This document shows, piece after piece, positions 26,708 through 29,255 of a DNA stretch of 64,000 nucleotides (positions within the stretch are counted from its first letter, which is position 1; each line of letters begins with the position of its first letter). Made by a program: the position numbers and the translations under genes. This DNA is from Piromyces finnis finn. Lineage: Eukaryota; Fungi; Neocallimastigomycota. The stretch spans positions 62,001 to 126,000 of the forward strand of contig MCFH01000032.1 of the NCBI GenBank assembly GCA_002104945.1, given 5' to 3'. The notes beneath the pieces were generated by a model that did no database searches, was not told the origin of the DNA, and worked only from the letters and a program-made list of their open reading frames with translations.

Positions 26708-28935
26708 TTATGCTTCTGTTTCTTCTGGTCTAATGAAGAGCATAATCAAATTAAGAATAATAGCAAGACAAACAAGAGCAAAGATAATGTAAATACCCTT
26801 AGTATTATCTAATGGTTCACGGTTTGGATTTCTTGTAATCTTCATAGCTCTCTTATGATAGACAGATAAGGAATAGATCATGAATAATAAACCAACAAAG
26901 GTATATATAACAGAAGTAATACCGATAAAGTCAAACATAGTATGGGTGAATAATTTGTAACTGGTTTTTGAAACACCGTACATAATAAGAGAAAGTGAAC
27001 AACCAGCTAATAAAATACCAACATTCATATATTGTAAAAAGATTCTTTCATTAGCCATGTGAACCTTTGGTTCGACACGTGTTGGTCTCTTAATCTTTCT
27101 TTCCTTCTTTTTCATTTGACCAATCTTGATTTGAATTTCTGGATTGTTTTCTTCAAGAGTACTTGGATCAAATGGAAGGTATACCTTGGTTGGGGTATTT
27201 TCAATGACGGTTGGAACATGAATTGGTGAACGAATATCAATGTGCATTTGGTTGAACCAGTATGGATTACGTGGAATACGGTGTGGAATTAAAGTTGCAC
27301 AACCGTGACAGAATTTAGAGAATTTTGGAGTTTCTTCGACCAAGTGACTATTTTGAATTTCAGTAACCCAAGCTGGTGGTTCCTGACCAACGTGAGTTTG
27401 TAACTTAACTACAAATTGGTATTGTTTACATTAAAGTGGTGATAATAACAAGCAAAGGCATTGCATGTATATATGGAGGAAGAGTAGTGATAAAATATTT
27501 AAAGTTTTATAATAATCATTGAAAGATATTGTAGATTGGTGGTAGGGGATAGGTAGTGATAGTGACAAAATATTAAAAAATATATATATATTTAAAATCA
27601 TTGTTAAAAACCATCTAAATTTTATTGAAAAAAAAACTATACAAACGATATACTATATTCATATAATAAAGTTTATGTTTTACCTTCAAGAACGGCATAT
27701 GGGAAACGAACAATTTCGTTTTCCTTTAATTCTTCAAATGGCCAGTTAATACCGATATCAGTTCTACGCCAGTTACCCTTGGCTCTACCTTCATCTTCAC
27801 GAATAAAGGTTAATTCTGTATCTAAAGAAATACGTACTCTAGCATCATCTGGTAATTGGAAAGCAGTACGATTATAGAAAGTTCTCATGGTTGGAACTAA
27901 GCGTCTTTCCTTGATAGCCTTTTGGTATTCACGAGAAAGGGTTTCCATTTCAAGTAATTCCTTTTCAGTCTTTTTACCTTCAGCACGAAGTTGACGAATC
28001 TTGTTATCAAGAGTATATTGACCAGCGTTGAAAGCATTAACATTACTTTCATCCATAGCAAATCTTTGCTTTACACTGTTATCACCGGTCCAATCTTCGT
28101 GGTGAGTCTTACGTTCAGCAAAAATTTCCTTGTTATCAACATCACCGTACCAACGGTAACGAATAGCGATAGCTTGATCGGTCTTTAAAAGACGACCCAT
28201 ATATAAACCCATATTACTGTTATCGTAGTAAATAGAAGAAATAGCTGGGTTGTATTTTCTACCGTCCTTTGGCTTGAAAACGTTAATTGGAAGGTGACGA
28301 AGAATGAGAGCCTTTAATTCTGTAACGTAATCAGGGTGAACCCAATACTTGATAGACTTTCTAACAAAGTTTTGGTTACTTAACTTTTTCTTTTCCTTAT
28401 TTAAATCACCAGCATTACGAATCAAATTGTATATAATACTTAATTTGGTTAAAATATCATTAACAACAGTTTTATCTAAGAAAAGGTCAGCCCAAATTTG
28501 TTCCATAGTGTCACTAATTTTTATGTCTAAAACACCACTTTGGGATAAGGCAGCATTAATAGATTCCATTAATCTTCTATGAGAAGCGGTAAATTTTTCT
28601 AAAAGACATAAATCTAAAGTGACAGCTTCAACTTCATCTAACATATATTTCCAGTAATTTGGTCCAGATAAAATTTGACCATTTACTTCTACTCTTCTGT
28701 TATTTTCTTGTTGAACCATAGTTTCGTATTCACCAACAGCAGCATGTAATCTTTCTAATACTGCTTTTATAAAAGTAATTGGTTTACGAAAATGACTATG
28801 TAATTGTTTAAGAATATCTTGTGGTTGAGCAGCACGGCCATCGTAACCGATAGCTCTTTCTAAAGAATCTTGATCGGTATAATAAGATTCCCACTTGTTA
28901 ATCTTACAATATTCAAATTCTTTCATAAAAGGCAT
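26708..28935 (-). CDS. VTC4: Vacuolar transporter chaperone 4 (polyphosphate polymerase; SPX + VTC/CYTH + DUF202), 2 exons (28935-27684, 27408-26708)
   Basis: Motifs FVRKSIKYWVHP, ISSIYYDN, IRYRWYG, ERKTH, RTFYNRTAFQLPDDARVRISLDTEL, WRRTDIGINWPF, and after splicing (GAA G|GTAAAA at 27683; GTAG| at 27409) [23 protein letters not shown]...PKFSKF. C-terminal VEPKVHMANER plus three hydrophobic helices. Confidence 0.95.
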
Positions 28936-29029
28936 GTTGACTAAATTTTATATATATCTATAAATAAGTTGGTACTATTACCGATGTTTGAATAGAAACA
29001 AAATGAAAGAATGATTAAAAATTATTGTA

Positions 29030-29255
29030 ATAATGTTGAAAGCATGTTGAAACAAAGTTGGAAAATTTTGAAAAAATGTTGAAAGAGCGTTGAAATAATA
29101 ATGAAATAGTATTGAAAGAATGTTGAGAGAACGTTGAAATAATAATGAAATAGTATTGAAAGAATGTTAAAAATTATTGAAAGAACGTTGAAAAAATATT
29201 GAAATAATGTTTGAATGAATATTGAATGAACGTTTGAAATAATGTTGAAAGAATC
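29030..29255. repeat. Degenerate short-period tandem repeat (RTGTTGAAAGAA / TATTGAAATAA variants) upstream of VTC4
   Basis: TTGAAA/GTTGAA recurs every ~10-20 bp; the block CGTTGAAATAATAATGAAATAGTATTGAAAGAATGTT occurs twice. Confidence 0.65.

What the first reader, a model, noticed from the sequence alone, without database searches (positions are those of the whole stretch)
28530..28935. VTC4 polyphosphate polymerase with an apparently inositol-pyrophosphate-blind SPX domain
The N-terminus MPFMKEFEYCKINKWESYYTDQDSLERAI aligns without gaps to yeast Vtc4 MKFGEHLSKSLIRQYSYYYISYDDLKTEL (recalled). Scaffold positions F3, I12, Y18, Y19, D23 and L25 are kept, but ligand residues change: K2>P, Y22>Q, K26>E. 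The lysine surface cluster also appears gone: after the conserved LxKF, canonical ...KIIKKHDK reads SINAALSQ (nt 28563-28540). Catalytic-domain residues (KYW, RxRWYG, ERKTH, LEVK, KFSK) are intact, so this is not a pseudogene. Established: SPX domains sense InsP7/InsP8 through exactly these basic clusters and activate VTC. Inference: this enzyme is uncoupled from inositol-pyrophosphate control (constitutive, partner-regulated, or sensing another ligand), a possible rewiring of phosphate/energy storage in a hydrogenosome-bearing anaerobe.
Basis: partly seen in the sequence, partly recalled or inferred. Interest (0 to 1): 0.8.

Follow-up and report, generated by a model that had tools for sequence, protein, structure and literature searches.

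The report
Polyphosphate polymerase with a ligand-blind sensor domain
This gut fungus (Piromyces finnis) and its whole phylum keep an active-looking Vtc4 polyphosphate polymerase in which every residue known to bind the phosphate-status signal (inositol pyrophosphates) has been replaced, so polyphosphate storage is probably controlled differently here than in all studied eukaryotes.

Summary
The window carries the two-exon Piromyces finnis VTC4 gene (minus strand, 28935..26708, 650 aa, identical to ORX47087.1). Eight spliced transcript contigs from close relatives fix the same start codon.

The catalytic tunnel and membrane domains are intact. The N-terminal 185 aa still model as an SPX fold but fail Pfam SPX. 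All six inositol-phosphate contacts of yeast Vtc4 (Y22, K26, K133, K129, K132, K136), plus K2, are non-basic here (Q, E, A, S, A, Q, P). They are invariant in 53 of 53 other fungal Vtc4 proteins.

New here:
- The second InsP6 site on the catalytic domain (K300, R302, K320) is also lost (D, S, Q). These are 3 of only 4 conserved basic columns lost there, out of 30.
- The domain is under purifying selection as strong as the catalytic domain (dN/dS 0.04-0.09) and about 94% identical across genera.
- The phylum has a second Vtc4-derived paralogue (916 aa in P. finnis). Its N-domain is also degenerate.

The most likely reading is that polyphosphate synthesis is uncoupled from inositol pyrophosphates. 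Binding was not tested.

The scan flagged a similar VTC4 on other DNA of this genome (s1-186162), probably the paralogue. I found no paper on this. It is a new variant of a known kind.

The parts
26708..28935 (-). VTC4 (paralogue A) gene, 650 aa, two exons
   Evidence: The spliced translation is identical to P0129 / P. finnis ORX47087.1. The best PDB match is yeast Vtc4.
27684..28935 (-). Exon 1 (codons 1-417 plus the first base of codon 418)
   Evidence: ORF list. A GT donor follows GAA G. Transcripts read LEVKLQTH without interruption.
27409..27683 (-). Intron, 275 nt, GT..AG, phase 1, splitting the catalytic LE|VK motif
   Evidence: The intron is absent from the intron-less contigs L001-L008.
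26708..27408 (-). Exon 2 (end of the tunnel domain, short linker, three-helix membrane domain, stop TAA)
   Evidence: Pfam hits the VTC C-terminal end and DUF202.
28381..28935 (-). SPX-derived N-terminal domain (aa 1-185): fold kept, ligand pocket removed
   Evidence: No Pfam SPX hit. The AF2 model has pLDDT 82. Its best structural matches are all SPX domains: VIA Z 15.3, rmsd 3.0 A over 180 residues, and Foldseek TM 0.72-0.75. dN/dS is 0.04-0.09.
28849..28935 (-). Helices alpha1/alpha2 region (aa 1-29) with K2>P, Y22>Q, K26>E
   Evidence: Residue roles are from PMC9911596.
28537..28596 (-). Helix alpha4 segment (aa 114-133), KFTASHRRLMESINAALSQS. It replaces canonical KF.RLNYTGF.KI.KKHDK. K129, K132, K133 and K136 are lost.
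28570..28584 (-). S-H-R-R-L motif (aa 118-122), invariant in both Neocallimastigomycota paralogues, next to the former pocket
   Evidence: One search lists S118 H119 R120 R121 L122 among the invariant columns.
27221..28380 (-). Catalytic triphosphate-tunnel (VTC/TTM) domain, aa 186-480, interrupted by the intron
   Evidence: Pfam VTC E 4e-59. Foldseek 3g3r/3g3q gives target TM 0.92 at rmsd about 2 A. 119 of 135 invariant columns are kept. The catalytic residues are kept.
27991..28053 (-). Former second InsP6 site (yeast K300, R302, K320), here D295, S297, Q315
26726..27067 (-). C-terminal membrane domain (DUF202-type, aa about 532-645)
   Evidence: Pfam DUF202 E 1.3e-7.
29004..29254 (.). Tandem array of an 11-nt unit (about 23 copies), 69-319 nt upstream of the start codon. 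It is not part of the protein finding.
   Evidence: Tandem Repeats Finder. It is not present in the 5' UTR of the closest transcript, L002.

Best explanation
This is the Piromyces finnis orthologue of Vtc4, the catalytic subunit of the vacuolar/acidocalcisomal polyphosphate polymerase.

Shown: the ATP-using tunnel domain and the membrane channel domain are intact. The N-terminal domain descends from an SPX domain and still models as that helical fold. On the stem of the Neocallimastigomycota it lost all six residues that bind InsP6/PP-InsP in yeast Vtc4, plus K2. The three basic residues of the second InsP6 site on the tunnel domain were lost on the same stem. After that, the gene duplicated into a slowly evolving 650-aa copy (this gene) and a faster evolving copy of about 910-950 aa. 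Both copies keep the catalytic motifs.

Inferred: the polymerase no longer reads inositol pyrophosphates through its own SPX domain. The domain is kept, under strong constraint, as a structural or regulatory module. It most likely pairs with the N-domain of the paralogue, in the way the SPX domain of Vtc4 pairs with that of Vtc2/3 in yeast. Activity would then be either constitutive or set by another input. Yeast substitutions at the same positions (Y22, N123, K129) make VTC constitutively active.
For: - Gene model and identity.
- Start codon fixed by eight spliced transcript contigs, each with an upstream in-frame stop.
- All PBC/KSC positions and K2 are replaced in 7/7 Neocallimastigomycota and kept in 53/53 other fungi.
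- Residue roles, and the effect of mutating them (reduced InsP6-stimulated synthesis): PMC9911596.
- Y19F/Y22F, N123A and K129A, introduced in both Vtc3 and Vtc4, give constitutive activity: PMC10167327.
- The second InsP6 site K300/R302/K320 is replaced by D/S/Q. These are 3 of only 4 basic-invariant tunnel columns lost, out of 30. By my own hypergeometric estimate the chance is about 1e-3.
- Catalytic residues are all kept.
- The N-domain dN/dS of 0.04-0.09 equals that of the catalytic domain.
- SPX fold of the model.
- Paralogue B exists in P. finnis, Anaeromyces and Neocallimastix. It forms a 100/99-supported clade with this gene on a long stem.
Against: - No binding or activity data exist.
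- His119-Arg120-Arg121, invariant in both paralogues, sits one to three helical turns from the former lysine cluster on alpha4. It could form a residual or new anion site.
- Paralogue B keeps Lys at the K26 and K132 positions, so a partner could still sense the ligand.
- The SPX-like model was built from an alignment dominated by canonical SPX sequences. Helical bundles also give inflated structural scores (notes).
- I could not test whether the genome has Vtc1, Vtc2/3, Kcs1 or Vip1.
- PBC/KSC mutants of yeast Vtc4 alone lower activity rather than raise it, so 'constitutive' is not the only outcome of a blind SPX.
Confidence: 0.62

Rival explanations
1. The complex is still controlled by inositol pyrophosphates, through another surface. 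Candidates are the N-domain of paralogue B, which keeps Lys at the K26 and K132 positions. Another is a canonical Vtc2/3-type or Vtc5-type partner that I could not look for. A third is a rebuilt basic site around His119-Arg120-Arg121 of this protein.
For: Paralogue B retains two of the six contacts in all six sequences. SHRRL is invariant across paralogues that otherwise share about 31% identity in this domain. That note hints that SPX signalling as such persists.
Against: Two Lys out of six contacts is less than what the yeast triple mutants retain, and those mutants already lose most InsP6 stimulation. In yeast it is the SPX of Vtc4, not that of Vtc3, that acts as the sensor in the assembled complex. 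The inter-subunit InsP6 site is also lost in both paralogues. Paralogue B also fails Pfam SPX.
Confidence: 0.22
2. The N-domain has been repurposed to read a different signal, such as orthophosphate or sulfate, a nucleotide, or a protein partner. It would then be a new kind of regulatory domain rather than a silent scaffold.
For: Purifying selection is very strong, with about 94% identity across genera. A lineage-specific invariant block, LCLLEK(F/Y)..SHRRL.E, plus W95-K96 and I147-W148, is shared by both paralogues. Only 14 of 43 canonical invariant positions are kept, so the surface was rewritten rather than merely decayed.
Against: No ligand or partner is indicated by any tool. The N-domain has no sequence relatives outside its own cluster at database-wide significance. 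Conservation alone is equally explained by a structural role inside the complex.
Confidence: 0.14
3. Artefact: a wrong gene model hides a canonical SPX exon, or the gene is decaying.
For: None beyond the failure of Pfam SPX.
Against: Eight intron-less transcript contigs from three sources begin at the same ATG. Each has an in-frame stop 12-21 nt upstream and no ORF in its 133-599 nt AT-rich 5' UTR. In the window, TAA lies 15 nt upstream of the ATG. dN/dS is 0.04-0.09.
Confidence: 0.02

Closest known systems
Saccharomyces cerevisiae Vtc4 (PDB 5IIG, 5IIQ, 3G3Q, 7YTJ, 8I6V), catalytic subunit of the VTC polyphosphate polymerase
   Same: It has the same three-part architecture: N-terminal helical domain, triphosphate-tunnel domain, and three-helix membrane domain. 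The tunnel domain is about 56% identical. All catalytic residues are kept. The N-domain model superposes on the Vtc4 SPX (Z 15, TM 0.72-0.75).
   Different: The N-domain is only about 17-20% identical and fails Pfam SPX. None of the six PBC/KSC contacts or K2 is kept, nor any of the three residues of the second InsP6 site. The acidic linker before the membrane domain is much shorter.
Yeast VTC mutants vtc3/vtc4 Y19F,Y22F; N120A/N123A; K126A/K129A (Pipercevic et al. 2023, PMC10167327)
   Same: Natural substitutions occur at the same positions of Vtc4: Y22>Q, N123>H, K129>S.
   Different: Those are laboratory point mutants in an otherwise canonical SPX, made in both subunits. Here the whole pocket is rewritten and fixed in a phylum. 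Whether the outcome is also constitutive activity is not known.
Yeast Vtc2/Vtc3 accessory subunits
   Same: The Neocallimastigomycota paralogue B (P0298 in P. finnis) may fill the same place as a second large subunit. This is an inference.
   Different: Neither paralogue is a Vtc2/3 orthologue. The window protein scores 116 bits to Vtc2/3 against 284 bits to Vtc4. The two paralogues arose by a lineage-specific duplication of Vtc4, and both keep the catalytic motifs.
Other VTC-domain proteins with an N-domain that fails Pfam SPX: Vavraia culicis (microsporidian) L2GW19, a Phycomyces nitens paralogue KAI9020012.1, Fabomonas tropica
   Same: They have a tunnel domain plus a membrane domain behind an N-domain of about 180-230 aa with several pocket lysines replaced.
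   Different: They are independent lineages (for Vavraia). Most keep part of the cluster. Phycomyces also has a canonical Vtc4 (P0080). None was studied further here.

Membership tests
Vtc4 (catalytic VTC subunit) | Triphosphate-tunnel (VTC, PF09359) domain with the catalytic residues (yeast K200, R264, R266, K281, E426, K458) | tested here: met
   Pfam VTC E 4e-59. K196, R259, R261, K276, E417 and K449 are all present. Foldseek to 3G3R gives target TM 0.92.
Vtc4 (catalytic VTC subunit) | C-terminal three-helix membrane domain (DUF202 type) | tested here: met
   PF02656 E 1.3e-7 on exon 2.
Vtc4 (catalytic VTC subunit) | Orthology to Vtc4 rather than Vtc2/3 | tested here: met
   284 bits to yeast Vtc4 against 116 bits to Vtc2/3. 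It groups within fungal Vtc4 in the ML tree.
Vtc4 (catalytic VTC subunit) | N-terminal PP-InsP-sensing SPX domain | tested here: not met
   The fold is present, but the Pfam SPX model and all ligand contacts fail.
Vtc4 (catalytic VTC subunit) | Polyphosphate synthesis from ATP in a complex with Vtc1 | not testable with these tools
   This needs biochemistry. Vtc1 of this genome was not found, for lack of a seed sequence.
SPX domain (PF03105) | Match to the family profile | tested here: not met
   No hit at E<=1 on aa 1-180. A profile built from 53 Vtc4 SPX domains gives only 21.6 bits. hhalign probability is 77-81%.
SPX domain (PF03105) | SPX helical fold (alpha1/alpha2 hairpin on a long three-helix core plus alpha5/alpha6) | tested here: met
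   The AF2 model has pLDDT 82 with helices 11-18, 22-29, 38-81, 92-133, 138-150 and 155-174. The top 29 VIA matches are all SPX domains, Z 15.3-11.5. Caveat: the alignment used for the model was mostly canonical SPX.
SPX domain (PF03105) | Phosphate-binding cluster (Y22, K26, K133 of yeast Vtc4) | tested here: not met
   Q22, E26 and A129 in 7/7 sequences.
SPX domain (PF03105) | Lysine surface cluster (K129, K132, K136) | tested here: not met
   S/A125, A128 and Q132. There is no K or R in aa 122-138.
SPX domain (PF03105) | Binding of InsP6/PP-InsP | not testable with these tools
   This needs ITC or MST with the recombinant domain.
Vtc2/Vtc3 (non-catalytic accessory subunits) | Tunnel domain without the catalytic lysine, closer in sequence to Vtc2/3 than to Vtc4 | tested here: not met
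   K449 is kept in KFSKF. The score to Vtc2/3 is far lower.

The most novel reading that the evidence does not exclude
A whole fungal phylum has taken polyphosphate synthesis out of the otherwise universal inositol-pyrophosphate/SPX control circuit. It removed both InsP-binding surfaces of Vtc4 and then duplicated the gene. The complex would then carry two potentially catalytic Vtc4-derived subunits in place of the Vtc4/Vtc2-3 pair. The invariant His-Arg-Arg block would mark a new regulatory site. The change may be tied to life in the phosphate-rich gut of herbivores or to hydrogenosomal energy metabolism.
Probability: 0.3. Interest if true: 0.75.

Novelty: new variant of a known kind. Interest (0 to 1): 0.6.

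Why it matters
SPX domains are viewed as the common receptor through which eukaryotes couple phosphate transport and storage to inositol pyrophosphates. VTC is the best-studied example.

A natural Vtc4 lacking every ligand contact, conserved phylum-wide and under strong constraint, is a ready-made test of two questions. The first is what the SPX domain does apart from ligand binding, that is, autoinhibition versus activation. The second is how polyphosphate synthesis is governed without that signal.

It also bears on phosphate and energy storage in anaerobic gut fungi, which are used for biomass conversion.

The parallel degeneration seen in a microsporidian suggests that the coupling is dispensable in some lifestyles.

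Tried and rejected
- **RNA reads.** RNA evidence therefore comes from assembled transcript contigs of close relatives (95-97% identical), not from P. finnis reads. Runs X3/X4 hold 73-78% of the words, as a spliced transcript would, but that is only suggestive.
- **Pfam SPX.** There was no hit on the N-domain.
- **hhalign.** The mixed A+B alignment against canonical SPX was poor (probability 41%) because of the long inserts of paralogue B. It was redone with A alone.
- **N-domain word search.** It found only its own cluster.
- **Truncated hits.** Hits without a Pfam SPX mark turned out to be N-terminally truncated gene models of Pezizomycotina, not degenerate domains.
- **Literature and supplements.** The supplement of PMC10167327 lists no Neocallimastigomycota entries. 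Literature searches found nothing on VTC, polyphosphate or inositol pyrophosphates in anaerobic fungi.
- **Other pathway genes.** I could not look for Vtc1, Vtc2/3, Vtc5, Kcs1, Vip1 or other SPX proteins of this genome. No seed sequences with a usable reference were available, and I did not type sequences from memory.
- **Electrostatics.** Model coordinates are not exposed, so no surface electrostatics could be computed. Whether His119/Arg120/Arg121 face the old pocket rests on helical periodicity only.
- **Rejected readings.** The pseudogene and wrong-start-codon readings were considered and rejected.
Full report
**What is there**

The minus strand carries an ORF that starts at 28935 and reads MPFMKEFEYCKINKWESYYTDQDSLERAI. 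It runs to PYAVLE and then meets a GT donor. A 275-nt GT..AG intron (27683..27409, phase 1) splits the codon for Val418. Exon 2 (27408..26708) continues with [11 protein letters not shown] and ends in TAA. The spliced product is 650 aa. It is letter-for-letter the GenBank protein ORX47087.1 of Piromyces finnis (P0129), which UniProt names 'Vacuolar transporter chaperone complex subunit 4'. The window therefore comes from P. finnis, an anaerobic gut fungus of the Neocallimastigomycota.

**Family assignment**

Pfam finds the VTC tunnel domain (aa 192-417 and onward into exon 2, E 4e-59) and the DUF202 membrane domain. It finds no SPX domain in aa 1-180, even at E<=1. Against the PDB, the best matches are yeast Vtc4 (E about 1e-83). 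Vtc2 and Vtc3 score only E about 1e-32. A two-domain AlphaFold model (pLDDT 83) superposes its tunnel domain on 3G3R/3G3Q with target TM 0.92 at about 2 A. The yeast catalytic residues K200, R264, R266, K281, E426 and K458 correspond to K196, R259, R261, K276, E417 and K449. All are present, and all are invariant in the alignment.

**The start codon is real**

TAA lies 15 nt upstream of the ATG in frame.

The 90%-identity cluster of this protein holds sequences from Neocallimastix, Piromyces and Anaeromyces. Eight intron-less contigs carry the uninterrupted coding sequence. They come from an ENA assembly, a JGI sample and six Logan-assembled runs, and they are 94-97% identical in protein to the window. 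Because they lack the intron, they are spliced transcripts.

All eight begin at the same ATG. Each has an in-frame stop 12-21 nt upstream. Their 5' UTRs are 133-599 nt long, 8-14% G+C, and contain no ORF.

Direct laying of P. finnis reads was not possible. 

**The sensor pocket is gone**

According to PMC9911596, InsP6 on yeast Vtc4 is held by two clusters. The phosphate-binding cluster is Y22, K26 and K133. The lysine surface cluster is K129, K132 and K136. Mutating either triplet reduces InsP6-stimulated synthesis in the assembled complex.

I aligned 53 full-length fungal Vtc4 proteins from chytrids, Rozella, Zoopagomycota, Mucoromycota and Ascomycota. These six positions and K2 are invariant in all of them. 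In seven of seven Neocallimastigomycota sequences they read Q22, E26, A129, S/A125, A128, Q132 and P2.

HMMER and one MAFFT run place a one-residue gap differently in helix alpha4. That does not matter, because residues 122-138 contain no Lys or Arg at all. The paralogue described below reads NIIKA where the canonical sequence reads KIIKK.

Of 15 columns that are at least 95% basic in canonical SPX domains, only four are kept. Of 43 invariant columns, only 14 are kept.

**A second ligand site is gone too (new here)**

The cryo-EM structure shows a second InsP6 wedged between the tunnel domains of Vtc4 and Vtc3. On the Vtc4 side it is held by K300, R302 and K320. These columns are basic in 53/53 canonical sequences. 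In the Neocallimastigomycota they are D/E295, S/C297 and Q315.

The tunnel domain has 30 columns that are at least 95% basic. The clade keeps 26 and loses four, and three of the four are exactly this site. By my own hypergeometric estimate, the chance of that is about 1e-3.

So the basic residues of two separate inositol-phosphate surfaces were removed, while the catalytic tunnel was left untouched.

**The domain is not decaying**

Nei-Gojobori dN/dS between the window and four transcript sequences is 0.04-0.09 for aa 1-185. For the tunnel domain it is 0.05-0.08. dS is 0.3-0.6. The N-domain is about 94% identical across genera.

A model of aa 1-188 alone (pLDDT 82) has the SPX helix pattern. 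By Foldseek it is closest to SPX domains, with TM 0.72-0.75 to Vtc4 in 7YTJ and 8I6V. By VIA-align it gives Z 15.3, rmsd 3.0 A, 180 residues aligned. The top 29 rows are all SPX domains of Vtc4, rice SPX1, XPR1 and Gde1.

There are two caveats. The alignment given to AlphaFold was mostly canonical SPX. Helical bundles also give generous scores.

By sequence alone the domain is barely recognisable. It scores 21.6 bits to a profile of 53 Vtc4 SPX domains, with hhalign probability about 80%. It has no database-wide relatives beyond its own cluster.

**A second paralogue**

The exhaustive representative search put a 931-aa Anaeromyces robustus protein, ORX85130.1, on top. Its orthologues include a 916-aa P. 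finnis protein (P0298) and a 909-aa Neocallimastix californiae protein.

This paralogue B has long low-complexity inserts. It also fails Pfam SPX. It keeps the catalytic motifs KYW, RYRWYG, ERKTH, LEVK and KFSKF. It shares D and S at the K300 and R302 positions. Of the six pocket contacts, it keeps Lys only at the K26 and K132 positions.

In a maximum-likelihood tree of the tunnel domain, A and B form a clade with 100/99 support on a long stem of 0.61 changes per site, inside fungal Vtc4. The order of events was therefore: accelerated change and loss of the ligand sites on the stem of the phylum, then duplication, then near-stasis of copy A.

Across both paralogues the block LCLLEK(F/Y)..SHRRL.E is invariant, although the N-domains share only about 31% identity. 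His119-Arg120-Arg121 lies one to three turns before the former lysine cluster on alpha4, and H119 takes the place of yeast N123. This is the main reason not to call the domain inert.

Earlier notes of this scan on another piece of the same genome (s1-186162, s1-186235) probably describe paralogue B.

**How it most likely works**

Shown:
- The polymerase is intact and expressed.
- The N-domain is constrained and lacks every known inositol-phosphate contact.

Inferred:
- The enzyme no longer reads PP-InsP through its own SPX.
- In yeast, the SPX of Vtc4 binds the SPX of Vtc2/3 and this inhibits the complex. PP-InsP, or substitutions at Y19/Y22, N123 or K129 in both subunits, break this contact and give constitutive activity (PMC10167327).
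- The natural changes here hit Y22, N123 and K129.
- I therefore commit to a PP-InsP-independent, probably constitutively active or otherwise gated polymerase, whose N-domain serves as an assembly or regulatory module, perhaps with paralogue B. Confidence is about 0.6.

Rivals:
- Sensing through paralogue B, another partner, or the His-Arg-Arg site (about 0.2).
- A repurposed sensor for another ligand (about 0.15).
- Artefact (about 0.02).

That high phosphate in the herbivore gut relaxed the need for this control is my speculation only.

**Comparison and novelty**

The gene is already annotated as Vtc4, so the enzyme itself is known. The loss of both ligand sites, the strong constraint on the remnant domain, and the Vtc4-derived paralogue were not found in any paper searched.

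The condition is not unique in kind. Among 90 representatives with an N-domain, most keep the cluster. A microsporidian (Vavraia culicis), a Phycomyces nitens paralogue, Fabomonas and some unnamed metagenomic proteins show partial degeneration and also fail Pfam SPX. The Neocallimastigomycota copy A is the most complete case seen, with none of the seven positions kept.

I rate it a new variant of a known kind, with interest about 0.6.

**Not done**

- Presence of Vtc1, Vtc2/3, Vtc5, Kcs1, Vip1 and the state of other SPX domains in this genome.
- Surface electrostatics.
- Any binding or activity assay.

Noticed in passing
window 29004-29254: A tandem array of an 11-nt unit (TGAAAGAATGT on the + strand, about 23 copies, 69% matches). 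A 44-nt higher-order period is also present. It lies 69-319 nt upstream of the VTC4 start codon. The 5' UTR of the closest transcript contig (L002) does not contain it.
   Followed up: partly
P0298 (P. finnis, 916 aa), P0135 / L009:2001-4796 (Anaeromyces robustus), P0300 (Neocallimastix californiae): A second Vtc4-derived paralogue in Neocallimastigomycota. It has long Asn/Gln-rich inserts, intact catalytic motifs and an equally unrecognisable SPX-derived N-domain. It evolves much faster (63-67% identity between genera) than copy A (94% or more).
   Followed up: partly
P0215 (Vavraia culicis L2GW19), P0236, P0151 (Phycomyces nitens KAI9020012.1), P0281 (Fabomonas tropica): Other VTC-domain proteins whose N-domain fails Pfam SPX and lacks several pocket lysines. 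This includes a microsporidian, another fungal lineage without classical mitochondria. It may be convergent loss of PP-InsP control.
   Followed up: partly
They are not part of the gene.
   Followed up: no
window 27673-27684: If the intron is not removed, the reading frame stops after three codons (GKT*). Some database members of the cluster (for example P0134, 416 aa, ending LEGK) and split GenBank models in N. californiae and A. robustus (135-aa 'DUF202' fragments) are such unspliced or split gene models. An earlier scan note, 'Vtc4 that stops before its membrane domain' (s1-186235), may be the same kind of artefact.
   Followed up: partly
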